Assembly: GCA_002104945.1 (NCBI GenBank)
Contig: MCFH01000007.1
Coordinates: forward strand, 1,116,001-1,180,000
Direction of reading: 5' to 3'
DNA from: Piromyces finnis finn
Lineage: Eukaryota; Fungi; Neocallimastigomycota
DNA: 64,000 nucleotides
Positions 1 through 18,137 of the stretch are shown in pieces. Positions within the stretch are counted from its first letter, which is position 1. Every line of letters starts with the position of its first letter. Under the pieces are notes generated by a model. The model did not search any database. It worked only from the letters and a program-made list of their open reading frames with translations, and was not told the DNA's origin. Both the position numbers and the translations under genes were made by a program.

Positions 1-856
1 GAAATTAAATTTAAAATAATATAATTATAATTCATTAAATTATTAACAAAAAAAGTTGAAAATTATGTTTAAATAAACAAAGAAGAAATAAAAATAAATC
101 AATAATTATAGCTATTAATTAACATATGTATTTATGAAAGAAGAAGAAAAAATGTAACCATAAAGAGATAAAAATAATTATTATGATGAAAACATTTTTT
201 CAAAATAATTAAAAAAAAGTGCATTACTGATATTTATACAAAATAAAATATAATCTATACATTCTATATATTATTTACAGTTTTTTTTTTTTCATTTAGA
301 TTCATTAAATATTTCTTTTTTTTATATATATTAAAATATTTGATATATGAAGTTTTTTTTATCTTAATGAAAATAATAAAAAAAAAATTTTTTTTTTTAC
401 TATAAAAATTTTTATATGCAAAAATTTTCTTTATAAATAAATATCTATTTTAAATTAAAGATTAAATTAATGAATAATAATAACATTGATAATAAATTAA
501 AAAAATAATAATAAAAGTAATAAAAGTAAAATAAATAAATTAAAAGAAAGAAAGAAAGAAAAATAAAAAAAAAAAAGATAAAAAATAAAATAAATAACCA
601 TGATTTTTTTTTTATCTAAATGTATATAATACATAAATAGATAAATAGTAATATATATATTAATAAAAAAAAATAAAATTTATTGATATTAAATGAATTC
701 ATTGAAAATTTTATAATTGTTTTTTCAATAATGTCATTATTAAAAAGAATTGATTTATTCTTTATTTTAATAATAATCTATACTTTAATATACATTTTAT
801 TATGTTCTATTCAAATAAATAAAAAAGAAGACATAAATACGAACAATAATATTAAT

Positions 857-3800
857 ATGGCTGCGAATCGTCAACAATTTGAATATATCGTAAATAAATA
901 TATTTATATTTGTGTTTATAATAATAATAGTAATAATAATAATAAGCAGTAATTAAAAAATAATACCTTTTTTTTGGATTATTAATAAAAAAGTATAAAA
1001 TTCAAACACAAGAACAATGGGAAGAAGAACTCAAAAAACCAACTATTGAAGGTAAAAAAAAAAAATAATAATAATAATAAAATAAAATAAAATAAAATAA
1101 GAAAAAAAACACTATAAATATTCACAATTAATATATATTAATTAATTCTAATTAAATAAATTTTTATTTTACAAATAATAATTTTTTTAACATCAGTGTT
1201 TGACGTTGTATGTTGGAAAATCATAAAATTATAGTATTTTATTATTTAAAGTATATATATATATATTGATTTTTATTAAATTTAATTAAAATTCTAGTAT
1301 TCTGGATGGGCTGGACCATGTAATGCAATTACTTCCACTTTTAAGAAATTAAAATTAGAACTAAATGATGATGTTACTTTTGCTCAAGTTAATATAATGT
1401 ATTTATTTTAATAATAAATAAAGTTTAATAATAATTAATTTTTTATTATTTTGATTTATATAAAGGTTAAAGCTGATGATATCGAGGATTTAAAAGATTA
1501 TCGTGATAATTCCTGTCCTTATTTTTTATTTTATAATGTAATTGATATAAATACAATGATAATATGACACTTTATATTAACTATGTTAATTAAAATAGAC
1601 ACAATTATTAATTTATATACAAACCACAAAAGCATGGTGTATTTGTTGATTTAGTTATAGGTGTTAATGCATCTTTAATTGAAAAAAAGATAAAACAACA
1701 AATAGAGAATGAAAAAAATAATGTTACCAGAGTGGTGGTATTACATAGCTTATTTATTATAATTGATTATAATAATAAATATAAATATATATTTGAATCG
1801 ATAAAGCAATACTATATTAAAAATATTATTTATTATTTCAAAAAAAAAAGTTTGTTCCTGAAAAGAAAGCTAAGCCAAAAACACCACTCAAGTCAAAGAA
1901 GGAAAAGAAAATCGAAAAAGAATATGTTATTGCTATATTAAAATCTGAAGTTTTAAGAAATGATATTATTGAAAAGATTATAGAAATATTTATGAAAAAT
2001 AGCTTTGCAATTGAAGAAAAAAAAGATGTTGAACTTTCATCTGATCAAGTTAGTTTACTTTATAGTGATTTAGCCGATGATAATCCATTAAAATCAAAGC
2101 ATATAGAATATATGTCAAGGTCTATATTAATATATACTAAATAGAAAAATGAGGATATAATAATTAATAAGTTTTTTTTTTTTTTAATTATCAATTTTTT
2201 ATTTATAAAGTAATCCATGTCTAGCATTTTTATTAGCGAGAGAGGATCCATTTACTTTATTAAATGAACTATCAGGACCAGAAAATCCTACAGTAGCAAA
2301 AGAAGAAAATCCAGAAAGGTTTAATAATTTTATATTTTACTTAATAATTAATTAACACTTCTATATAAAGACTAATTTTAAATTTTTAAAAAAATAATAA
2401 ATGAATAAAAAAGTATTCGTTCAGTTTATGGTGTTGATGGTAAGATATTGATATTAACATATATTAACATATATTAAAATTATTATTATTAACATTTACA
2501 TATTAATATATAAAGAAATTAAGAATGCTATATATGTATCCAAAAGTTCTTTATCTGTATTGAGAGACGCAGAAATATTATTTCCGGATAGAGTTGCTGA
2601 AATTAAAGAACAACAAGAAAAGCTTAAAGTCATTTCATCACGTATTCAACATACTCTTATTATTATTAAACCAGATGCATATAAAAATGACAAAAAAGAC
2701 GAAATATTTGATATCATTAAATCAAATGACTTTAATATAATTGCCGAAAAAGAGATTTTACTTACTAAGGATATGGCACAAGAATTTTATAGAGATCATA
2801 TATCAAAATCATTCTATGAAACATTAACATCTTACATGAGCAGGTATACATAAAAATGTTACAAAAATCTCATTTTTCTATATATATTTGTTAATGTTTA
2901 TATGTTTAATATAATTAAAATGTTGCTATAATAAATGAATAGTGGTCCAATTTATGCAGCTGTGATTGAAAAAGAAAATGCTATTAAGTCAATAAGAAGT
3001 TTGATTGGCCCAACTAATCCAGAAAAAGCAAAAGAAGTCGCACCAGATAGGTAATGATAATCAAATAAAATATCAATAAATAAAAATAAATAATTAATAA
3101 TTTATAAATTATTATAATTTATATTAGTATTCGCGCTTTATTCGGTATTGATGTATGTAAAAACGCTATTCATGCTTCTGATACAATTTCCAATGCTGAA
3201 AAAGAAATCAATATATTATTCCCAGAAATTGAAGAATTAAAGGATGATGTAAAGCCAATTATTGAACGTACTTTTGCATTAATTAAACCTGATGTTTATT
3301 CTGAAGACGGTAAAAAGAATGAAATAATATCTTTAATACAGGAAAAAGGTTATAAAATTATTGCTGAGCGTGAAGTTAAATTCGAACCTGATACCGCTAC
3401 TGAATTATATAAAGAACATCAAAATCAATCATACTTTGAAGACCTTGTTAATTACATGTCAAGGTAACAATAAGCTTGCACAAATAATGTATATATTGTG
3501 AAATATAAATAATTTTATTTAACAATTAAAATTATTTGATTTATTATAATAGTGGACCTTCTTATGCTATGGTATTAGAGAAATTGGAAGCTATTCAAGA
3601 TTTTGTATATTTAGTTGGTCCAAAAGATGTCCAAGAAGCCAAGACTTCCCAACCAGAAAGGTATAGTATTGTAGTAAAGATATATTATTATCATTACAAA
3701 AAATTAATATTTATTATAATTATTTTCATTAGTTTAAGAGCTAAATATGGAAGTGATATATTAAAGAATGGAATTCATTGTTCATCAAATGAAAAGAGTG

Positions 3801-6494
3801 CTATTAGAGAAATTAAACTTTTATTTAGTGATATTGACCCATTAGCCTTGCAATCAGAAGAAATTCAAAGAGTTTTGTTTTTAATTAAACCTGATGTTTA
3901 TGCTAATAACAGAATGGATGATATTAAAGATATGTTAATAGATAATGGATACAGTATATTAGCTGAAAAAGAATTAATTATGAATGAAGAAACTTCTAAA
4001 GTTATTTTCAAAAAGCATGAAGAAAAATCATTCTTTAAAGACTTAATTGAATGGGTATCAAAGTAAGTAAATAATAAAATAAATAGTTTAAGTAGTAATA
4101 ATAAAGTTAAACTACTAATATTTTTATTAATTTATTAAATTTAAAAGTAAACCAGTATATGCTATGGTAATTGAAAGATTAGATGGAATAAACAGATTAT
4201 TCAGAATTAAAGGTCCTACCAATCCAGTTAAAGCAAGAAATGATGTACCTGAAAGGTAAATTTGTATTAATTATAATATATTAAATTCCAAAAATTAAAT
4301 ATTAAAAACTATTTATTTATTTACTTATTTATATATAGTATTCGTGCTAAATATGGTACTGATGGTGTTAAGAATGCTGTTCATTCTTCAGATTCTATAG
4401 ATGTAGCAAAGGAAGAAATCAATTTATTATTCCCTGAATTACCCGAAGTTTTAAAGAGCGAAAAGACATTAGCCTTAATTAAACCAGACGCATATGGTAC
4501 AGGAAAGAAGGATGAAATTGTAAAAATGATTAAAGATAGTGGTTTCAATATTGTATCAGAAAAAGAATATAAAATGTCAATAGAAATTGCAAAAGAATTT
4601 TATGCAGAACATACAGGAAAACCATTCTTTGAAAGTTTAACAACTTGGATGAGTAGTGCACCAATTTATGCAATGAAGCTTGAGAAAGAAAATTGTGTTA
4701 AATCTTGGAGGGAATTAATGGGACCAACTAATTCTGAAAAAGCACGCGAAATTTCCCCACAAAGGTAAAGATCATATAACGTTTTAATTAAAAATATTAA
4801 TATAAAATACTTTGTTCTCATTATTCATGAGTTTGTTAATTTATATTAAAATTAATATTAAACTATAGTATTCGCGCATTATTTGGTACAGATGGATCTC
4901 GTAATGCAGTCCATGGTTCTGATTCATTCCGTAGTGCTAAACGTGAATTAGAAATTATTTTCCCAGAATTGTGTCAAAAAACTACCACATTAGCTTTAAT
5001 AAAACCAGATGCTTATGGTTCAGGAAAGAAGGATGAAATTGTTAAAATGATTAAAAATAAGGGATTTGATATTGTAGAAGAAAAGGAATATACTATGACT
5101 ATTGATATGGCTAAAGAATTTTATAAAGAACATTTAGGAAAATCGTTCTTTGAAAAATTAACTACATGGATGAGTAGTGCACCAATTTATGCAATGAAGC
5201 TTGATAGAGTTAATGCGATTAAATCATGGAGAGCTTTAATGGGACCAACAAATTCTAAAAAGGCTCGTGAGTTAGCTCCTGAAAGGTATTTAATTATAAA
5301 AAATTGATTTATTTTAATAAATAAATTTCATAAGAAATCTCATGATATTTCAAACTTTTATAATAAATGATAAATAGTATTCGTGCGTTATATGGTACTG
5401 ATGGATCTCAAAATGCTGTTCATGGTTCTGATTCAACTGCAAGTGCTATCCGCGAATTAAAATTAATATTCCCAGAAATAATTGTAGAAATACCAAAGCC
5501 AACACAAACATCAATTAAAGCACAAATTGTAAATGCTGAATCAGTACAATCTGAAGATATTATTGAAATTAAAGCAAAAGAAATTAATTCAAATAATACT
5601 GAAGCTCAAAAAATTACAACATTAGCGTTAATTAAACCTGATGCTTATGGTGCTGGAAAGAAAGACGATATCATAAAAATGATTAAAGATGATGGATTCA
5701 CAATCATTGCTGAAAAAGAATATTCAATGACATTAGATGTAGTAAAAGAATTCTATAAAGAGCATGAAGGAAAACCATTCTATGAAAGATTAATCACATG
5801 GATGAGTAGTGCACCAATTTATGCAATGAAATTAGAAAGAGAAAATGCAATTAAAGAATGGAGAACTTTAATGGGACCAACAAATTCTGAAAAAGCTCGT
5901 GAAGAAGCTCCTCAAAGGTAAACAAATATAATAAATAAATAAATAAATAATAATAGTAATAATAGTAATAATAATAATATTATTATTATTATTAAACAAT
6001 AATTTAAATATTCACTTTTATTACATATAAAAATGATTTTATTTTTATATCAATAAATAATTTATAAAGTATTCGTGCATTATATGGAACAGACGGTTCT
6101 CAAAACGCTGTTCATGGTTCTGATTCACCAGCAAGTGCCGAACGTGAATTAGGTATTATATTCCCAGAATTAGGACCAAAAATTGCAACATTAGCATTAA
6201 TTAAACCTGATGCTTATGGCGCTGGAAAGAAAGACGATATCATAAAAATGATTAAAGATGATGGATTCACAATTATTGCTGAAAAAGAATATTCAATGAC
6301 ATTAGATGTAGTAAAAGAATTCTATAAAGAGCATGAAGGAAAACCATTCTATGAAAGATTAATCACATGGATGAGTAGTGCACCAATTTATGCAATGAAA
6401 TTAGAAAGAGCAAATGCAATTAAAGAATGGAGAACTTTAATGGGACCAACAAATTCTGAAAAAGCTCGTGAAGAAGCTCCTCAAAGGTAAACAA

Positions 6495-6531
<37 letters not shown>

Positions 6532-9339
6532 CAATAATTTAATTATTCACTTTTATTACATATAAAAATGATTTTATTTTTATATCAATAAATAAATAAT
6601 TTATATAGTATTCGTGCATTATATGGAACAGACGGTTCTCAAAACGCTGTTCATGGTTCTGATTCACCAGCAAGTGCCGAACGTGAATTAGGTATTATAT
6701 TCCCAGAATTAGGACCAAAAATTGCAACATTAGCATTAATTAAACCTGATGCTTATGGTGCTGGAAATAATGGTGAAATTATAAAAATGATTAAAGATGA
6801 TGGATTTACGATTGTTGCTGAAAAAGAATATTCAATGACATTAGATGTTGCAAAAGAATTCTATAAAGAACATGAAGGAAAACCATTCTATGAAAAATTA
6901 ACCACATGGATGAGTAGTGCACCAATTTATGCAATGAAATTAGAGAAAGTAAATGCAATTAAATCATGGAGAACTTTAATGGGACCAACAAATTCTGAAA
7001 AAGCTCGTGAAGAAGCTCCTCAAAGGTATACGAATATAATAATAATAAATAATAATAATAATAAATAATAAATAATAAGTAATAATAATATTAATAAACA
7101 ATAATTTAATTATTCATTTTTATTACATATAAAAATGATTATATTTTTATATCAATAAATAAATAATTTATATAGTATTCGTGCATTATATGGAACAGAC
7201 GGTTCTCAAAACGCTGTTCACGGTTCTGATTCACCAGCAAGTGCCGAACGTGAATTAGGTATTATATTCCCAGAATTAAGTCAAAAAACTTCAACATTAG
7301 CATTAATTAAACCTGATGCTTATGGAGCTGGAAAGAAAGATGAAATTATTGAAATGATCAAGGATAATGGATTCACAATTATTGCTGAAAAAGAATATTC
7401 AATGACATTAGATGTTGCAAAAGAATTTTATGCAGAACATGAAGGAAAACCATTCTATGAAAGATTAACCACATGGATGAGTAGTGCACCAATTTATGCA
7501 ATGAAATTAGCAAAAGTAGATGCAATTAAAGCATGGAGAACTTTAATGGGACCAACAAATTCTGAAAAGGCTCGTGTTGAATCACCACTAAGGTAATAAA
7601 TATAAGATGTTTTTAATATAATGATAATGATATATTATTACTATAAAGATATTATAAAGATTAAAATAAATTTTTTAAATTTAAATTCATATAATTAATA
7701 TTATAATTTTTTTTTTTATTTATATAAAATTAAATATAGTATTCGTGCATTATATGGTACTGATGGATCTCAAAATGCTGTCCATGGTTCTGATTCAATT
7801 GCAAATGCAAAACGTGAATTAGAAATTATATTCCCAGAATTAAAAAAAGGAAATACAACATTAGCATTAATTAAACCTGATGCTTATGGTGCTGGAAATA
7901 ATGGTGAAATTGTAAAAATGATTAAAGATAATGGATTCAAAATTGTCGCTGAAAAAGAATATTCAATGACATTAGATGTTGCAAAAGAATTCTATAAAGA
8001 ACATGAAGGAAAACCATTCTATGAAAGATTAACCACATGGATGAGTAGTGCACCAATTTATGCAATGAAATTAGAGAAAGAAGATGCAATTAAATCATGG
8101 AGAACTTTAATGGGACCAACAAATTCTGAAAAAGCTCGTGAAGAAGCTCCTCAAAGGTATACGAATATAATAATAATAAATAATAATAATAATAAATAAT
8201 AAATAATAAATAATAATAAATAATAATAATAATAATAATAATAATATTAATATTAATAAACAATAATTTAATTATTCATTTTTATTACATATAAAAATGA
8301 TTATATTTTTATATCAATAAATAAATAATTTATATAGTATTCGTGCATTATATGGAACAGATGGTTCTCAAAATGCTGTTCATGGTTCTGATTCACCAGC
8401 AAGTGCCGAACGTGAATTAGGTATTATATTCCCAGAATTAAGTCAAAAAACTTCAACATTAGCATTAATTAAACCTGATGCTTATGGAGCTGGAAAGAAA
8501 GATGAAATTATTGAAATGATCAAGGATAATGGATTCACAATTATTGCTGAAAAAGAATATTCAATGACATTAGATGTTGCAAAAGAATTTTATGCAGAAC
8601 ATGAAGGAAAACCATTCTATGAAAGATTAACCACATGGATGAGTAGTGCACCAATTTATGCAATGAAATTAGAGAAAGAAGATGCAATTAAATCATGGAG
8701 AACTTTAATGGGACCTACAAATTCTGAAAAGGCTCGTGTTGAATCACCACTAAGGTAATAAATATAAGATGTTTTTAATATAATGATAATGATATATTAT
8801 TACTATAAAGATATTATAAAGATTAAAATAAATTTTTTAAATTTAAATTCATATAATTAATATTATAATTTTTTTTATTTATATAAAATTAAATATAGTA
8901 TTCGTGCATTATATGGTACTGATGGATCTCAAAATGCTGTCCATGGTTCTGATTCAATTGCAAATGCAAAACGTGAATTAGAAATTATATTCCCAGAATT
9001 AAAAAAAGGAAATACAACATTAGCATTAATTAAACCTGATGCTTATGGTGCTGGAAATAATGGTGAAATTGTAAAAATGATTAAAGATAATGGATTCAAA
9101 ATTGTCGCTGAAAAAGAATATTCAATGACATTAGATGTTGCAAAAGAATTCTATAAAGAACATGAAGGAAAACCATTCTATGAAAGATTAACCACATGGA
9201 TGAGTAGTGCACCAATTTATGCAATGAAATTAGAGAAAGAAGATGCAATTAAATCATGGAGAACTTTAATGGGACCAACAAATTCTGAAAAAGCTCGTGA
9301 AGAAGCTCCTCAAAGGTATACGAATATAATAAATAAATA

Positions 9340-9384
<45 letters not shown>

Positions 9385-10519
9385 TAATAATAAATAATAA
9401 TAATAATAATAATAATATTAATATTAATATTAATAAACAATAATTTAATTATTCATTTTTATTACATATAAAAATGATTATATTTTTATATCAATAAATA
9501 AATAATTTATATAGTATTCGTGCATTATATGGAACAGACGGTTCTCAAAACGCTGTTCATGGTTCTGATTCACCAGCAAGTGCCGAACGTGAATTAGGTA
9601 TTATATTCCCAGAATTAAGTCAAAAAACTTCAACATTAGCATTAATTAAACCTGATGCTTATGGAGCTGGAAAGAAAGATGAAATTATTGAAATGATCAA
9701 GGATAATGGATTCACAATTATTGCTGAAAAAGAATATTCAATGACATTAGATGTTGCAAAAGAATTTTATGCAGAACATGAAGGAAAACCATTCTATGAA
9801 AGATTAACCACATGGATGAGTAGTGCACCAATTTATGCAATGAAATTAGCAAAAGTAGATGCAATTAAAGCATGGAGAACTTTAATGGGACCAACAAATT
9901 CTGAAAAGGCTCGTGTTGAATCACCACTAAGGTAATAAATATAAGATGTTTTTAATATAATGATAATGATATATTATTACTATAAAGATATTATAAAGAT
10001 TAAAATAAATTTTTTAAATTTAAATTCATATAATTAATATTATAATTTTTTTTTTTATTTATATAAAATTAAATATAGTATTCGTGCATTATATGGTACT
10101 GATGGATCTCAAAATGCTGTCCATGGTTCTGATTCAATTGCAAATGCAAAACGTGAATTAGAAATTATATTCCCAGAATTAAAAAAAGGAAATACAACAT
10201 TAGCATTAATTAAACCTGATGCTTATGGTGCTGGAAATAATGGTGAAATTGTAAAAATGATTAAAGATAATGGATTCAAAATTGTCGCTGAAAAAGAATA
10301 TTCAATGACATTAGATGTTGCAAAAGAATTCTATAAAGAACATGAAGGAAAACCATTCTATGAAAGATTAACCACATGGATGAGTAGTGCACCAATTTAT
10401 GCAATGAAATTAGAGAAAGAAGATGCAATTAAATCATGGAGAACTTTAATGGGACCAACAAATTCTGAAAAAGCTCGTGAAGAAGCTCCTCAAAGGTATA
10501 CGAATATAATAAATAAATA

Positions 10520-10574
<55 letters not shown>

Positions 10575-11664
10575 TTAATAAACAATAATTTAATTATTCA
10601 TTTTTATTACATATAAAAATGATTATATTTTTATATCAATAAATAAATAATTTATATAGTATTCGTGCATTATATGGAACAGACGGTTCTCAAAACGCTG
10701 TTCATGGTTCTGATTCACCAGCAAGTGCCGAACGTGAATTAGGTATTATATTCCCAGAATTAAGTCAAAAAACTTCAACATTAGCATTAATTAAACCTGA
10801 TGCTTATGGAGCTGGAAAGAAAGATGAAATTATTGAAATGATCAAGGATAATGGATTCACAATTATTGCTGAAAAAGAATATTCAATGACATTAGATGTT
10901 GCAAAAGAATTTTATGCAGAACATGAAGGAAAACCATTCTATGAAAGATTAACCACATGGATGAGTAGTGCACCAATTTATGCAATGAAATTAGCAAAAG
11001 TAGATGCAATTAAAGCATGGAGAACTTTAATGGGACCAACAAATTCTGAAAAGGCTCGTGTTGAATCACCACTAAGGTAATAAATATAAGATGTTTTTAA
11101 TATAATGATAATGATATATTATTACTATAAAGATATTATAAAGATTAAAATAAATTTTTTAAATTTAAATTCATATAATTAATATTATAATTTTTTTTTT
11201 TATTTATATAAAATTAAATATAGTATTCGTGCATTATATGGTACTGATGGATCTCAAAATGCTGTCCATGGTTCTGATTCAATTGCAAATGCAAAACGTG
11301 AATTAGAAATTATATTCCCAGAATTAAAAAAAGGAAATACAACATTAGCATTAATTAAACCTGATGCTTATGGTGCTGGAAATAATGGTGAAATTGTAAA
11401 AATGATTAAAGATAATGGATTCAAAATTGTCGCTGAAAAAGAATATTCAATGACATTAGATGTTGCAAAAGAATTCTATAAAGAACATGAAGGAAAACCA
11501 TTCTATGAAAGATTAACCACATGGATGAGTAGTGCACCAATTTATGCAATGAAATTAGAGAAAGAAGATGCAATTAAATCATGGAGAACTTTAATGGGAC
11601 CAACAAATTCTGAAAAAGCTCGTGAAGAAGCTCCTCAAAGGTATACGAATATAATAAATAAATA

Positions 11665-11719
<55 letters not shown>

Positions 11720-12823
11720 TTAATAAACAATAATTTAATTATTCATTTTTATTACATATAAAAATGATTATATTTTTATATCAATAAATAAATAATTTAT
11801 ATAGTATTCGTGCATTATATGGAACAGACGGTTCTCAAAACGCTGTTCATGGTTCTGATTCACCAGCAAGTGCCGAACGTGAATTAGGTATTATATTCCC
11901 AGAATTAAGTCAAAAAACTTCAACATTAGCATTAATTAAACCTGATGCTTATGGAGCTGGAAAGAAAGATGAAATTATTGAAATGATCAAGGATAATGGA
12001 TTCACAATTATTGCTGAAAAAGAATATTCAATGACATTAGATGTTGCAAAAGAATTTTATGCAGAACATGAAGGAAAACCATTCTATGAAAGATTAACCA
12101 CATGGATGAGTAGTGCACCAATTTATGCAATGAAATTAGCAAAAGTAGATGCAATTAAAGCATGGAGAACTTTAATGGGACCAACAAATTCTGAAAAGGC
12201 TCGTGTTGAATCACCACTAAGGTAATAAATATAAGATGTTTTTAATATAATGATAATGATATATTATTACTATAAAGATATTATAAAGATTAAAATAAAT
12301 TTTTTAAATTTAAATTCATATAATTAATATTATAATTTTTTTTTTTATTTATATAAAATTAAATATAGTATTCGTGCATTATATGGTACTGATGGATCTC
12401 AAAATGCTGTCCATGGTTCTGATTCAATTGCAAATGCAAAACGTGAATTAGAAATTATATTCCCAGAATTAAAAAAAGGAAATACAACATTAGCATTAAT
12501 TAAACCTGATGCTTATGGTGCTGGAAATAATGGTGAAATTGTAAAAATGATTAAAGATAATGGATTCAAAATTGTCGCTGAAAAAGAATATTCAATGACA
12601 TTAGATGTTGCAAAAGAATTCTATAAAGAACATGAAGGAAAACCATTCTATGAAAGATTAACCACATGGATGAGTAGTGCACCAATTTATGCAATGAAAT
12701 TAGAGAAAGAAGATGCAATTAAATCATGGAGAACTTTAATGGGACCAACAAATTCTGAAAAAGCTCGTGAAGAAGCTCCTCAAAGGTATACGAATATAAT
12801 AAATAAATAAATAATAACAATAA

Positions 12824-12862
<39 letters not shown>

Positions 12863-13628
12863 ATATTAATATTAATAAACAATAATTTAATTATTCATTT
12901 TTATTACATATAAAAATGATTATATTTTTATATCAATAAATAAATAATTTATATAGTATTCGTGCATTATATGGAACAGATGGTTCTCAAAATGCTGTTC
13001 ATGGTTCTGATTCACCAGCAAGTGCCGAACGTGAATTAGGTATTATATTCCCAGAATTAAGTCAAAAAACTTCAACATTAGCATTAATTAAACCTGATGC
13101 TTATGGAGCTGGAAAGAAAGATGAAATTATTGAAATGATCAAGGATAATGGATTCACAATTATTGCTGAAAAAGAATATTCAATGACATTAGATGTTGCA
13201 AAAGAATTTTATGCAGAACATGAAGGAAAACCATTCTATGAAAAATTAACCACATGGATGAGTAGTGCACCAATTTATGCAATGAAATTAGCAAAAATAG
13301 ATGCAATTAAAGCATGGAGAACTTTAATGGGACCAACAAATTCTGAAAAGGCTCGTGTTGAATCACCACTAAGGTAATAAATATAAGATGTTTTTAATAT
13401 AATGATAATGATATATTATTACTATAAAGATATTATAAAGATTAAAATAAATTTTTTAAATTTAAATTCATATAATTAATATTATATTTTTTTTTTTATT
13501 TATATAAAATTAAATATAGTATTCGTGCATTATATGGTACTGATGGATCTCAAAATGCTGTCCATGGTTCTGATTCAATTGCAAATGCAAAACGTGAATT
13601 AGAAATTATATTCCCAGAATTAAAATAA
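857..13628 (+). CDS. Thioredoxin-like domain + ~20 tandem nucleoside-diphosphate-kinase domains (NME8/NME9/TXNDC3-type flagellar Trx-NDK protein), multi-exon, roughly 3000 aa
   Basis: Manual splicing from ATG 857 (MAANRQQFE...) gives a Trx fold (VFDV|YSGWAGPCNAITSTFKKLK...DNSCPYFLF...GVNASLIEKKI). It is followed by repeated NDK domains (TLALIKPDAY...FYxEHxGKPFY...MSSAPIYAM...WRTLMGPTNS...SIRALYGTDGSQNAVHGSD...RELxIIFPE). All introns are GT-AG and keep frame; stop TAA at 13626-13628. The Trx+NDK architecture is that of NME8/NME9 and sea-urchin dynein IC1 (established knowledge). The first short exons are less certain. Confidence 0.88.
6070..13628 (+). repeat. Intragenic tandem array of 417-nt exon + intron units; from 7176 a higher-order two-exon (A/B) unit of ~1145-1177 bp repeated about 5.5 times
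   Basis: Exons 6070-6486, 6609-7025, 7176-7592 and 7740-8156 are each 417 nt. ORF starts 7354, 8516, 9693, 10838, 11983 and 13135 give periods of 1162, 1177, 1145, 1145 and 1152. Introns are duplicated too and differ mainly in (AAT)n and poly-T length. Confidence 0.95.
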
Positions 13629-14133: not shown

Positions 14134-17100
14134 TTATATTTGCATTGAAGATGATAGTAACATTTGACTACCTTTCCATCTTAAATTCTGATATAAGCGT
14201 GAGATTAAATTTGCTACAGTAACTTTCGGTTTCCCTAATTCAATATTTTCTATTAAAGTTTCGAATTTTCCTACCCATTTAGATACTTGATCCTCATCAA
14301 AATGATTTTTACTATAAATAATACCACCTTTAATAGTATCATCATCCCATTCTACAATTATTAACTTAAATATAAAGGTGTTACTAAAATTGGAAGACCA
14401 AAGTTGTTTTATATTTGGACGGTATTTCATGTTTTCAGAATCTATATTTTCTGAATTATTATTATTAGATAAAGATGATGACGAAAAATCAATATCATCT
14501 TTTGTCCATCCTGAATTTCGACTTAATCCAAGAAAAATATCTTTAAGTTCAAGACCCATTTTTCTCCAAAGTGTACTTTCCTCTTTACTAATAAATTCAT
14601 ATTGCACTGGTAATTCTTGTGGTAAATCAGGAAAATTAAAAAGTTGAGTATATGAATAGTCACAATTAACTTTGCGAGACTTTTTAATGGAAAAGATAAG
14701 ATTAGCGAATAAATTATAAAATGTAATACCCTTTTGAGATAAATCAACTTTAATAGGTATAATATTGGAAAGTGGGCCAATTATGCAACCACATTCTCGA
14801 TAAATTCTTCTTTGAGATTGGTGAACACCTATTAAAAATTTTTCTATTCCAGAAATATGTCTAAGAAGAACACCATAGATTGCAAGACAAATAGCTTCAG
14901 TTGATGGCATATTATTATAAAAAGAATTTTCAGAGCCATAATAATTATCATCATCACTTAAATAGTCATAATCAGGTTCTACTAATGGTATATCACTTAA
15001 ATTTACTAACTCACGTTTTTCTCTTTCCATTTTTTTCATTAAGCATCTTTCAACTCTATATTCTTTATAATATTTATTCTTCCAATCATCGAAAAATGTT
15101 TGAAAATATTGATTTTGATCAGATTCTAGATGTAACGGCATAAAACTATAATGTAAATTATATTCTCCCCAATCATTTCTATCAACACTTTTCTGACGTA
15201 TTCCTTGAAGTTGCATTACAGGTATATGTGATATTTTGAGAGAAGGATGTAAAATCGAATTTATTTTTAATATTTCATTACATAGTTTTTCTATAGATTT
15301 TTCATATTTTTTATAATCTTTAATACAACGATCAAGTTCTCTTTGAGCTTTTGATAAATGTCTTTCTAGAGAAATTTTTACTTTTGAATGACCTTGTATA
15401 CATTCTCTTATTCTATTACGAACATATTCTACTAAGGCTGCTATTTTTCTTCTCTCGCTAGTATTTAATTGATATGTTTCTAAATCTTTATCTGATAAAG
15501 ATGCAAAATCTTCAATTTTCATTGTTGAAGATCTAATACGTTTTCTTACATGATCAGATACCTCATGTTTAATTAAGAAAGGTTCAATTGTACTAGTTGT
15601 TTCACTTCCTGATATCATTTTTAATATAACTTGCTTTGCCTCGTTCGATATTTCTAGTCTTTCTCCATTGATTGGATCGATAACAGTAGCTACTGATCCA
15701 TTTCCTTTTTCTAATTGAATTCTATCATTTGTTAATTTTTCTATTAAAACTTCATATTCTTTCTTTCTTTTTTCTAATTGACTATATTTTTCTTTCTTTT
15801 CTACCAAATCTTTTTTATTCTTTTTTAATTTTTCAATCATTTCTTCTTTCTCGTTTGGAAGTAGAATATCATTATTAACCTCTGTACACTGATTTTTCCA
15901 AAATGATTTTATTTTATCAATTGAGACTTTCATTTTATTGATATTCTCTTTTTGTTCTTGAGCAAAATCAATATAACAATAATTATCTTCTTTTGATTTA
16001 AATGATTCCAATGGATCAGAAATTTCACTATCATCATTATCTTCATCTCCAATAATTCTTATATGAAATTTACTATCTCTTTTTTCTTCTTGTAATGAAT
16101 ATAATGTTATAATTTCATTCATGATAGCATTTAATGATATTTCATCAGCCACCATTATTGATCCAATAATTGCAATTAATGTTCTTGGCCGTTCATCTTC
16201 ATTATCCATATTTATATATTGATCATCATATACTAATGGGATTTCTTCAATTGAACTTGTACTTTCTATATTTGTGGTATTATCTAATTTAATATCATTT
16301 TTACTAAACGAAACCCAATCCTTATCTATACCATATTGAAACATAAAAACTTTAAATTGGTTTTCAAATACTGGATTAGTATTTATCCAATTTTCAAGGA
16401 ATTGGTGAACAGAGGTTTCTGAAAGAGTTACTAACTTTGGATAATTTTGTTGTTTAACTTCTTCAAAATAAGAAAATTTTGTTTGATAATCTATAATATT
16501 TTTATAATTCCCCTTTAACTTATTATAATATGTTTCTTCATCAATAATAGCCTCAACATTTGCATCAATAATTTTATTATTTTGATAAAATCTTGTCTTT
16601 AAAACAGCGTATTTGTCACATATTTTATTAACTGCGCAATTCATAATATTTGGATCCAATGATTTATCAATTTGATAACACTGAATTGTATAATAATGTG
16701 AATTTCTTTTTCGTTTTGGTGTATCAACTGAATCAATACAATTAAATAAACCCAATTGATATGATGTTATAGGATAACTTACCATTGCTTGATTTTTATC
16801 TTCACTTAATATTGAAACAAAAGAATTTGTTAAACTTTTGTTTGAAGATAAAATATTTTGATTTATTTTTAAATTAGAAAAACTTGAATGACTAGATGAA
16901 TTAAATAGATGGTAATTTATATTATCATTAGTAATTTCTGTATTCTTATTACTAAATAAGTCATTTACATCATTTTTACTACAGGAACTGTCATTTTTAA
17001 TATTCTTAACAGAAAATTTTGTTTTGTCAATAGATTCAAAATTTGATATACTTTTTGAATTTGATTTTCTTTTGAAAGATGAATGTGATTTGTTTATTGA

Positions 17101-18137
17101 ATTCATGTTTGACTTTTTCTTTTTTAATTTTTCTTTCATTTTACTATTATTATGTACAATTGAAATATTAGAATTATTAGTAGATGACTTTTTCGATTCT
17201 GTTTTTTTATTTTTTTCAATGGTACCACTTTCAGATTTATTTAATTTATGTAAAGATAAATTTCTTGATTTTGTTTTATTTATTTCAAATGAGGAATTTT
17301 TCTTTCTTCTAACTTCCGAATAGCTCTTGCTATTAATAGAATTGTTAATTAAAGATATGTTTCTACTTGTCATATTATTATTTGTAATATTATTATATTA
17401 TATAATATTAATTTTTTTATAATGACTTGATTTAAATTTAATTACAATGTATATATAGTCTTATGAATTTTAAATTATTACTAATAATTATTATTATTAT
17501 TATTATTGTTGTTGTTATTGTTATTATTATTATTATATACCTTTGAGATGATTGTACTATTTTATGATCAATTGGAGGAATAGTCTTCTTGATTATATAT
17601 AATGTATAAAATTTATTTAGTACAATTAATAATTTTATAATATACTATAATGTACATCTTATTTAAAATTATTACTCTTGAAGTTCTTAATTTATCTTGC
17701 ATAATCAAATTATCTGTCACATCATTAACCAAATTTTCCCATTGTGGTATTATTTTTTTTTCTCTCATATTTGATTTAGTATGTGAATTTATATTTATAT
17801 CTTCTTTACTAAAAGAATTTGTATTATCAATTAAATCTATAATACTTTCATTTTTCAATGATTTTTTTTTAATATTTTTAATTCCATCTTTTGTTTTGGA
17901 TTGCTCTATTATTTTATTATTTAATAATAAATTTGATTTCAAGATTGGTTTACTAACTTTTATTTTATCATACACTTCATTTGATAATGATTTTTTTACA
18001 TTTAAATTCGAAGTCAAGCTAGGCTTTTTCGATAACTCTGGTAAATGAGTTACTGGCTCATTGTCAGAATTAGGTAATGTGGTATCATGATTAATAGTTT
18101 TAACAGATTGGTGTGATCTTATTTTTTTACTCTCCAT
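14134..18137 (-). CDS. Stand-alone NRPS condensation-domain-like protein (degenerate active site) with low-complexity basic/Ser-rich N-terminus and internal coiled-coil + SAM-like insertion
   Basis: The 1079-aa ORF contains C-domain core motifs in order: ITSYQLGLF (C1), KYAVLKTRF (C2), SIMVADEIS (C3, HHxxxDG degenerate), YIDFAQEQ (C4), IIGPLSNIIPIKVD (C5), NCDYSYTQL (C6). Upstream ORF 17613-18137 joins in frame through a small exon at ~17540-17590 (KTIPPIDHKIVQSSQ) with phase-compatible GT-AG sites. Confidence 0.72.

What the first reader, a model, noticed from the sequence alone, without database searches (positions are those of the whole stretch)
857..13628. Giant thioredoxin-NDP kinase polyprotein: one Trx fold followed by ~20 NDK domains
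Seen: manual splicing gives 1 Trx-like domain + 20 NDK domains in one frame. Domains 5-20 keep the canonical NDK catalytic set: K of KPD, Y of FY..H, R of WR, T of GPT, R of SIR, N and phospho-acceptor H of NAVHGSD, E of RE. Established: NME8 and sea-urchin outer-arm dynein IC1 carry Trx + 3 NDK, NME9 carries Trx + 1 NDK, and they associate with the axoneme. Inference: a roughly 3000-aa beaded chain of apparently intact kinases could act as a phosphotransfer relay or local ATP-regeneration scaffold along zoospore flagella in a hydrogenosome-bearing anaerobe, or fold into single-chain pseudo-oligomers (classical NDKs are hexamers). I know of no described NME protein with this copy number.
Basis: partly seen in the sequence, partly recalled or inferred. 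Interest (0 to 1): 0.9.

Follow-up and report, generated by a model that had tools for sequence, protein, structure and literature searches.

The report
Dynein-type thioredoxin protein with 20 kinase domains
A gut-fungus version of a flagellar-motor accessory protein (thioredoxin plus nucleoside-diphosphate-kinase domains, three in animals) has grown to 20 kinase domains by recent in-frame tandem duplication, 17 of them with a complete catalytic residue set.

Summary
Window 857-13628 (+) splices through 31 GT-AG introns into one 9,003-nt frame: 3,000 aa, one thioredoxin-like domain (WAGPC, not CxxC) and 20 NDK domains. D2 and D5-D20 keep all nine catalytic residues.

Full-length mRNA contigs of two related gut fungi share the start, the stop and the D1-D6 exon junctions, with Trx + 9 and Trx + 11 NDK.

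It belongs to the opisthokont Trx/NDK outer-dynein-arm lineage (NME8/TXNDC3, NME9/TXNDC6, sea-urchin IC1). The Trx domain's best solved matches are outer-arm thioredoxins.

Chytrid orthologues carry 4-8 NDK domains, and a Trx-less protist transcript carries 17 degenerate ones. Twenty is an outlier, not a new kind.

D7-D20 are a window-specific clade, built from 417-nt frame-symmetric exons and ending in 5.6 copies of a 1.15-kb two-exon cassette.

About 3.4 kb of the array is perfectly periodic.

The kinase-relay function is untested; human NME8/9 lack NDPK activity.

Another note of this scan (s1-186046) covers the same stretch. The scan has not reported this on other DNA.

The parts
857..13628 (+). 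Whole gene: 32 exons, 31 GT-AG introns, CDS 9,003 nt, 3,000 aa
   Evidence: model, no internal stop; same start (MA.NRQQFE.) and same end (FPELK*) as the orthologous mRNA contigs L001 and L008.
857..1916 (+). Thioredoxin-like domain (aa 11-116, motif WAGPC) plus a Lys-rich linker; six small exons plus the first 66 nt of exon 7, including an 11-nt micro-exon at 1197-1207
   Evidence: about 92% identical to P0158 residues 1-120. PF00085 at 38.6 bits on P0158; best PDB matches are TXNDC6 (4.7e-22) and outer-arm LC5 and LC3. AlphaFold pLDDT about 95, and Foldseek to 8j07_v1 at rmsd 1.4 A.
1917..5480 (+). NDK domains D1-D6: old, individually diverged and conserved. D1 is catalytically dead (H118Y); D3 and D4 are partly degenerate; D2, D5 and D6 are complete. 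D1-D4 carry two introns each.
   Evidence: each domain pairs 1:1 with its counterpart in the relatives; omega 0.07-0.18 at dS of about 0.8.
5481..5612 (+). Low-complexity linker of 44 aa between D6 and D7, inside the 540-nt exon 5378-5917
   Evidence: A linker sits at the same place in P0158, L004 and L008, but its sequence is not conserved.
5613..7287 (+). NDK domains D7-D9: older members of the window-specific expansion (exons 92-95% identical to one another)
7176..13628 (+). 5.6 tandem copies of a ~1.15-kb cassette (A exon 417 nt, 144-147-nt intron, B exon 417 nt, 164-199-nt intron with an AAT microsatellite), encoding the end of D9 through D20. Units start at 7176, 8338, 9515, 10660, 11805 and 12957.
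   Evidence: exons and introns are 98-100% identical; units 3 and 4 are identical; units 1, 2, 5 and 6 carry private SNPs or indels.
9425..12817 (+). Stretch of perfect period-1145 identity (2.96 copies). Here the copy number rests on the assembly alone.
8673..8693 (+). B-type conversion tract inside the A-type exon of unit 2; it turns AKVDAIKA into EKEDAIKS in D12
   Evidence: private variants of unit 2 at the positions equivalent to 7511-7531.

Best explanation
This is the orthologue, in what appears to be an anaerobic gut fungus, of the opisthokont thioredoxin/NDK subunit of the axonemal outer dynein arm (TNDK-IC: NME8/TXNDC3, NME9/TXNDC6, sea-urchin IC1).

Shown: a real, spliced 3,000-aa reading frame with a redox-dead thioredoxin-like head (WAGPC), six old NDK domains under purifying selection, a low-complexity linker, and a 14-domain tail. 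The tail arose after this lineage split from its sequenced relatives.

Shown: the tail grows and shrinks in frame. Each 417-nt exon is a multiple of three, is flanked by phase-2 introns at the S|IR motif, and encodes the last 40 aa of one domain plus the first 99 aa of the next. Unequal crossing-over between units, with gene conversion (the chimeric D12 exon), therefore adds whole domains. The latest step made 5.6 near-identical copies of a two-exon cassette.

Inferred from homology: the thioredoxin head docks on the tail of an outer-arm dynein heavy chain, as LC3, LC5 and TXNDC6 do, and holds the NDK array next to the motor.

Inferred from residue conservation only: the 17 complete active sites are working phospho-histidine NDP kinases that equilibrate ATP/ADP with GTP/GDP and other nucleotides at the axoneme. 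This would be a tethered nucleotide-homeostasis module comparable to the radial-spoke adenylate kinases of mammals. The degenerate D1, D3 and D4 would serve structure or binding.
For: Gene model and domains.

Catalytic residues. The window has 17/20 complete sets, chytrids 2-6 per protein, animals 0-1 of 3.

Orthologous full-length mRNAs with the same start and stop. Genomic orthologue with the same exon design and at least 11 domains before the contig breaks in a repeat.

Family: 40-odd chytrid proteins that NCBI names TXNDC3/TXNDC6, plus animal TXNDC3 homologues including sea urchin. Thioredoxin head closest to TXNDC6, LC5 and LC3. NDK array closest to sea-urchin IC1 and to axonemal NME7, NME5 and RSP23.

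Selection: omega 0.05-0.18 against the relative at dS of about 0.8.

Lineage-specific expansion: D7-D20 form one clade, support 98/91 and 96/97.

Transcription: RNA runs of the same organism hold 0.50-0.52 of the sampled words of 857-5400, against 0.54 expected if every exon is present.

Docking role of the Trx module: PMC10886578. Tethered adenylate kinases as precedent: PMC11779644.
Against: No localisation or activity data exist for any fungal member.

Human NME8 and NME9 have no detectable NDPK or thioredoxin activity (PMC13256974). Group II NMEs are generally reported inactive (PMC7024210).

The youngest 11 domains are so recent (dS about 0 between units) that their intact frames and active sites say nothing about selection for a high copy number.

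The copy number in the 3.4-kb perfectly periodic stretch is unverified. Short-read contigs of the organism's own DNA run hold only 0.49 of the words of 5401-9514, and RNA runs 0.27-0.29 against 0.69 expected.

Relatives' mRNA contigs show only 9 and 11 domains, although short-read assembly would collapse identical units.

Basidiobolus, which has no flagellum, has a related 5-NDK protein.
Confidence: 0.6

Rival explanations
1. Assembly inflation: the gene is real, but the assembler wrote too many copies of the 1.15-kb cassette. The true protein would then have about 12-18 NDK domains.
For: Units 3 and 4 are identical, and 9425-12817 is perfectly periodic. The organism's own short-read contigs hold only about half the words of the repeat region. 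Relatives' mRNAs show 9 and 11 domains.
Against: Units 1, 2, 5 and 6 each carry private SNPs, a conversion tract or distinct microsatellite lengths (181, 199, 164, 164 and 171 nt). At least five of the six units, and so 18 domains, are therefore distinguishable. Assemblers normally collapse perfect tandem repeats rather than expand them, so three perfect copies imply spanning long reads. A third gut fungus's contig also runs into a near-identical repeat after D10.
Confidence: 0.2
2. Structural role: the NDK domains act as a scaffold, a microtubule- or dynein-binding ruler, or a nucleotide sensor. They would not be kinases, as proposed for most animal group II NME proteins.
For: NME8 and NME9 lack NDPK activity (PMC13256974). 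NME7 is a structural inner protein of the doublet microtubule (solved entries). The catalytically degenerate D1, D3 and D4 are as strongly conserved as the intact domains, omega 0.10-0.18.
Against: All nine catalytic residues are retained in every post-D4 domain here, and in every domain from the third onward of the chytrid orthologues sampled. Animal orthologues and the 17-domain protist protein have lost them. That pattern is hard to explain without selection on catalysis or at least on nucleotide binding.
Confidence: 0.3
3. Neutral, unstable coding VNTR: the high count is a transient, possibly strain-polymorphic by-product of unequal crossing-over. Exon skipping among the frame-symmetric exons may give shorter proteins in vivo.
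For: dS between units is about 0. Domain counts differ between gut-fungal relatives: 9, 11 and 20.
Against: The older duplicates show purifying selection: A against B has dS 0.23 and omega 0.33, and D5 against D10 has omega 0.22. Every gut-fungal relative keeps a post-linker array. No isoform evidence was obtained either way.
Confidence: 0.25

Closest known systems
NME8 / TXNDC3 / DNAI8 and sea-urchin outer-arm dynein IC1 (TNDK-IC)
   Same: N-terminal thioredoxin-fold domain followed directly by group II NDK domains. Best Swiss-Prot match is sea-urchin IC1, 43% identity over three consecutive NDK domains. Animal TXNDC3 homologues are recovered at E of about 1e-113.
   Different: 20 NDK domains instead of 2-3 (PMC2978717). 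17 complete catalytic sets against 0-1 in the animals sampled. WAGPC instead of WCGPC. No acidic or low-complexity C-terminal tail. Predicted inter-domain geometry does not superpose (rmsd 15-19 A; both are predictions).
Chytrid 'thioredoxin domain-containing protein 3/6' proteins (e.g. Rhizophlyctis rosea, Phlyctochytrium bullatum, Spizellomyces punctatus SPPG_06597, Batrachochytrium dendrobatidis BATDEDRAFT_35212)
   Same: Direct orthologues. Thioredoxin-like head, often WAGPC or WSGPC. The first one or two NDK domains are degenerate and all later ones are catalytically complete.
   Different: 4-8 NDK domains against 20. The chytrid proteins printed here end in a long Ser/Thr/Pro/Lys-rich tail that the gut-fungal proteins lack. 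The gut-fungal proteins have an internal linker after D6 instead.
NME9 / TXNDC6 and Chlamydomonas outer-arm light chains LC3 and LC5
   Same: The thioredoxin head's closest solved relatives: E 4.7e-22, 1.1e-17 and 3.9e-13. The modelled head superposes on TXNDC6 in the human axoneme at 1.4 A. LC3 and TXNDC6 bind a dynein heavy-chain tail (PMC10886578).
   Different: LC3 and LC5 have no NDK domain, and NME9 has one. All three keep the CxxC motif.
NME7 (DM10 + two NDK domains, microtubule inner protein)
   Same: Best solved sequence match for a tandem NDK pair (E 1e-52), and it is axonemal.
   Different: No DM10 domain here. The predicted arrangement of adjacent domains does not match NME7's (rmsd 15-18 A).
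Uncharacterised 3,149-aa protist transcript product P0151 (JGI sample 3300017162) with 17 NDK domains
   Same: A very long uninterrupted array of NDK domains with ~5-aa linkers.
   Different: No thioredoxin head: the 750-aa N-terminal region has no Pfam match. The domains are old and mutually diverged, and only 1 of 17 keeps the full catalytic set.

Membership tests
NDK / NME superfamily (Pfam PF00334) | Sequence match to the NDK profile above the curated threshold | tested here: met
   exon translations score 59.6-138.4 bits against a cut-off of 27; 20 full-length domains.
NDK / NME superfamily (Pfam PF00334) | NDK alpha/beta fold | tested here: met
   Tested on the orthologue's domains D7-D9 and D1: AlphaFold pLDDT 96 and 91, and 0.7-1.5 A rmsd to solved NDKs. 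The window's own spliced protein could not be submitted by reference.
NDK / NME superfamily (Pfam PF00334) | Catalytic set K12, Y52, R88, T94, R105, N115, H118, S120, E129 (human NME1 numbering, mapped by motif) | tested here: met
   complete in 17 of 20 domains. D1, D3 and D4 are incomplete.
NDK / NME superfamily (Pfam PF00334) | NDP kinase activity through a phospho-histidine intermediate | not testable with these tools
   Needs an enzyme assay.
TNDK-IC / NME8-NME9 (thioredoxin + NDK outer-dynein-arm subunits) | N-terminal thioredoxin-fold domain of the outer-arm light-chain type | tested here: met
   PF00085 at 38.6 bits on P0158, about 92% identical to the window here; top PDB matches are TXNDC6, LC5 and LC3; the window's aa 1-125 match animal TXNDC3 heads at E of about 1e-25.
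TNDK-IC / NME8-NME9 (thioredoxin + NDK outer-dynein-arm subunits) | Group II NDK domains directly following the thioredoxin domain (1-3 in animals) | tested here: met
   The kind is met; the number (20) lies outside the described range.
TNDK-IC / NME8-NME9 (thioredoxin + NDK outer-dynein-arm subunits) | Redox-active CxxC (WCGPC) motif | tested here: not met
   WAGPC. The motif is also WAGPC or WSGPC in the chytrids where the regex hit and in some unnamed 3-NDK relatives, so it does not define the lineage.
TNDK-IC / NME8-NME9 (thioredoxin + NDK outer-dynein-arm subunits) | Physical association with the outer dynein arm or axoneme | not testable with these tools
   Inferred only from homology of the Trx head (PMC10886578).
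TNDK-IC / NME8-NME9 (thioredoxin + NDK outer-dynein-arm subunits) | Restricted to opisthokonts that build motile flagella | tested here: inconclusive
   named Trx + NDK hits are chytrids and animals. Basidiobolus (no flagellum) has a partial 5-NDK relative with no Trx head in the model. The search was length- and word-limited.
NME7 (DM10 + 2 NDK microtubule inner protein) | N-terminal DM10 domain | tested here: not met
   no DM10 hit on the full-length orthologue. The N-terminus is thioredoxin-like.

The most novel reading that the evidence does not exclude
Each outer dynein arm of the zoospore flagellum carries one polypeptide with 17 working NDP-kinase sites, a fungal counterpart of the radial-spoke adenylate-kinase system. 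Its domain number is a fast-evolving, selectable dial (9, 11 and 20 in three gut fungi; 4-8 in chytrids) set by unequal crossing-over of frame-symmetric exons. The dial might track flagellar length or number, or the nucleotide economy of a hydrogenosome-dependent cell. A corollary is that the ancestral opisthokont TNDK subunit was a true kinase and animals later lost the activity.
Probability: 0.15. Interest if true: 0.75.

Novelty: new variant of a known kind. Interest (0 to 1): 0.5.

Why it matters
What the NDK domains of the dynein-associated NME8/NME9 proteins do is an open question, because the human proteins show no kinase activity.

Fungal orthologues keep every catalytic residue in all but their first few domains. 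This gene takes that to an extreme: 17 complete sites in one chain.

That suggests the ancestral role was catalytic, or at least nucleotide-binding. It also offers natural material to test the idea, either a recombinant A/B di-domain or the 6-domain orthologue of Spizellomyces.

The locus is also a clean example of how frame-symmetric exons that straddle domain borders let a protein's domain number change quickly and in frame.

No protein of this length was found for this locus in a 5.8-billion-protein collection. Published annotations probably fragment or miss it.

Tried and rejected
Read mapping. I therefore have no depth-based copy number, no splice-junction reads and no isoform evidence.

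Word shares as a substitute. These worked for the unique 5' part (0.50-0.52 observed, 0.54 expected). They were uninformative for the repeats, because even the organism's own DNA contigs hold only 0.49 of the words there.

Tandem Repeats Finder found nothing, because the 1.15-kb period exceeds its 500-nt limit. I measured the repeats by script instead.

Looking up the window's own exon ORF among called genes found nothing.

Searches for a named Neocallimastigomycota protein of 818-5,152 aa found none. Only metatranscriptome and metagenome contigs turned up.

Pseudo-oligomer test. Chain-based fold searches show only that the packing differs from NME7 and from the predicted NME8 models. The pseudo-hexamer idea is neither supported nor refuted.

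Rejected readings. NME7-like: there is no DM10 domain. Pseudogene: 9 kb of open frame and omega of about 0.1. Fusion of separate genes: relatives' mRNAs are collinear from the same ATG to the same stop.

I did not type the spliced 3,000-aa protein into any tool. Pfam and structure tests of the thioredoxin head and of whole domains were run on the 80-92% identical orthologue P0158.
Full report
**What is in the sequence**

The window is extremely AT-rich, with GC of 11-30% across this region. Raw ORFs on the + strand between 2560 and 13377 score 59-138 bits on Pfam NDK, against a cut-off of 27. A motif scan found twenty 'AG|TATTCG...' acceptors, each at the conserved S|IR motif of an NDK domain.

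Joining exons at canonical sites gave 32 exons and 31 GT...AG introns of 72-199 nt. The CDS is 9,003 nt, from ATG 857 to the stop at 13626-13628. It translates to 3,000 aa with no internal stop.

**Independent support for the model**

A search of 1.84 billion cluster representatives with one 138-aa exon, followed by word-index searches, recovered P0158. P0158 is a 1,487-aa product of an intronless 4.8-kb contig present in two JGI samples. A second 6.1-kb contig, L008, encodes 1,729 aa.

- Both contigs start MAGNRQQFE. and end FPELK*, like the window's model, which starts MAANRQQFEY.
- P0158 is 80% identical over the first 1,060 aa, with no indel at any exon junction. This validates an 11-nt micro-exon (1197-1207) and the choice of donor at 1737.
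- They carry Trx + 9 and Trx + 11 NDK domains.
- L004, a metagenome contig of the L008-like species, shows the same exon design. It reaches D11 before ending inside a near-identical repeat.

RNA runs of the window's own organism hold 0.50-0.52 of the sampled 31-mers of 857-5400. The expectation is 0.54 if every exon, and nothing else, is present. The 5' third is therefore transcribed as modelled.

**Anatomy**

- **Head (aa 1-125).** This is a thioredoxin-like domain whose active-site motif is WAGPC. The first cysteine of CxxC is missing, so classical disulfide reductase chemistry is excluded.
- **D1-D6.** These domains have diverged from one another. Each pairs one-to-one with its counterpart in the relatives. 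They are under purifying selection, with omega 0.07-0.18 at dS of about 0.8.
- **Catalytic state of D1-D6.** D1 has Tyr for the phospho-acceptor His. D3 and D4 lack one or two phosphate-binding residues. D2, D5 and D6 are complete.
- **Linker.** A 44-aa low-complexity linker follows D6.
- **D7-D20.** All fourteen are complete. In total, 17 of 20 domains keep K12, Y52, R88, T94, R105, N115, H118, S120 and E129.

**How the array grows**

From 4869 onward every internal exon is 417 nt, except the 540-nt exon that holds the linker. Every intron is phase 2, at S|IR. Each exon encodes the last 40 aa of one domain and the first 99 aa of the next. Any gain or loss of exons therefore keeps the frame and adds or removes whole domains.

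D7-D20 form a clade to the exclusion of the relatives' post-linker domains, with support 98/91 and 96/97. The relatives' own terminal domains pair with each other in the same way. The tail therefore expands, or is homogenised, separately in each lineage.

The youngest layer is a ~1.15-kb cassette of A exon, intron, B exon and intron, present 5.6 times from 7176. Its exons and introns are 98-100% identical. Unit 2 carries a B-type tract inside its A exon, giving the chimeric D12. This is a footprint of gene conversion or unequal exchange.

**Is the copy number real?**

This is the weak point. Units 3 and 4 are identical, and 9425-12817 is perfectly periodic.

Units 1, 2, 5 and 6 have private SNPs, indels or microsatellite lengths. 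The five B-type introns within the cassette array measure 181, 199, 164, 164 and 171 nt. At least five of the six units, and so 18 domains, are distinguishable. Three perfect copies in an assembly also imply long reads, since short-read assemblers collapse such repeats.

Word shares in the repeat region were uninformative, because the organism's own DNA contigs hold only 0.49 of the words there. I put about 0.2 on material inflation of the count.

**What family it is**

The Trx head's best solved relatives are:

| Solved chain | E-value |
|---|---|
| Human TXNDC6/NME9 as modelled in the axoneme | 4.7e-22 |
| Chlamydomonas outer-arm light chain LC5 | 1.1e-17 |
| Chlamydomonas outer-arm light chain LC3 | 3.9e-13 |
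| Ordinary thioredoxins | 1e-11 and weaker |

An AlphaFold model of the orthologue's head superposes on the TXNDC6 chain at 1.4 A. The NDK array's best Swiss-Prot match is sea-urchin outer-arm IC1, at 43% identity across three domains. Ciona IC and vertebrate TXNDC3/6 follow. The best solved tandem match is axonemal NME7.

Database searches return about 40 chytrid proteins that NCBI names TXNDC3 or TXNDC6, plus animal TXNDC3 homologues. This is the TNDK-IC lineage, described as opisthokont-specific (PMC4415241). Nme8-like genes have been noted in Fungi (PMC7024210).

**How unusual it is**

| Group | NDK domains per protein | Complete catalytic sets per protein |
|---|---|---|
| Animals | 3 | 0-1 |
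| Chytrids | 4-8 | 2-6 |
| Gut-fungal mRNAs | 9 and 11 | 6 (P0158; L008 not scored) |
| This gene | 20 | 17 |

Domain counts are, and catalytic sets. Outside the Trx family, a protist transcript (P0151, 3,149 aa) has 17 NDK domains, but only one is catalytically complete.

The papers I could search describe 2-3 NDK domains for Nme8 (PMC2978717). None describes larger arrays. No protein model for this locus turned up among 5.8 billion sequences.

The finding is therefore a strong quantitative outlier of a known architecture.

**Function**

- **Shown.** The frame is intact, the older domains are under selection, the catalytic residues are conserved, and single domains fold as NDK at about 1 A to solved NDKs.
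- **Inferred, docking.** The Trx head docks on a dynein heavy-chain tail, by homology to LC3 and TXNDC6 (PMC10886578).
- **Inferred, catalysis.** The array acts as a tethered NDP kinase. The precedent for axoneme-tethered multi-domain nucleotide kinases is AK7, AK8 and AK9 on mammalian radial spokes (PMC11779644).
- **Cautions.** Human NME8 and NME9 show no NDPK activity (PMC13256974). NDK only exchanges gamma-phosphates, so 'ATP regeneration' needs another NTP pool. The youngest units are too recent to show selection for number.
- **Pseudo-oligomer idea.** It could not be tested. The three-domain model has pTM 0.72, but its packing matches neither NME7 nor the predicted NME8 models, and I could not inspect its coordinates.

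**Verdict**

This is a new variant of a known kind, of moderate interest. The decisive next steps are spanning long reads, full-length cDNA, flagellar proteomics and a kinase assay.

Noticed in passing
L003 (JGI sample 3300017162, contig Ga0186135_100066), gene 443-9892: An intronless 10.1-kb contig encodes P0151, a 3,149-aa protein. Its 750-aa N-terminal region has no Pfam match and is followed by 17 mutually diverged NDK domains with ~5-aa linkers. Only one domain keeps the full catalytic set. This looks like an undescribed giant NDK-array protein of a non-fungal eukaryote.
   Followed up: partly
P0003 (Basidiobolus ranarum K7432_008496, partial, 1,419 aa): A fungus without flagella carries a relative with five NDK domains, three of them catalytically complete, separated by long acidic low-complexity spacers. 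The partial model has no Trx head. This is at odds with a strictly flagellar role for the family.
   Followed up: no
window 1917-4459 versus 4460-13628: D1-D4 each contain a second phase-2 intron after the 'YMS' motif, giving 108-nt exons at 2211, 2943, 3553 and 4148. That intron is absent from D5-D20. The expanding tail therefore descends from a domain type that had already lost it.
   Followed up: partly
window 7026-7175, 8157-8337, 9316-9514, 10496-10659, 11641-11804, 12786-12956: The B-type introns hold an (AAT)n/(ATA)n microsatellite, and total intron length varies: 150, 181, 199, 164, 164 and 171 nt. These are the main copy-specific markers of the otherwise identical cassettes.
   Followed up: yes
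window 14134-17373 (- strand): An uninterrupted 1,079-aa ORF runs convergent to the NDK gene, with about 500 nt of 13%-GC spacer between the two stops. Another note of this scan (s1-185700) calls it a condensation-domain pseudoenzyme. I did not examine it.
   Followed up: no
L009 (Ga0307465_100945, 3,783 nt): An mRNA contig of a further gut-fungal relative has the same Trx-D1... order. It shows one frame shift near 2100 and runs off the contig end after about eight domains, so its count is unknown.
   Followed up: partly
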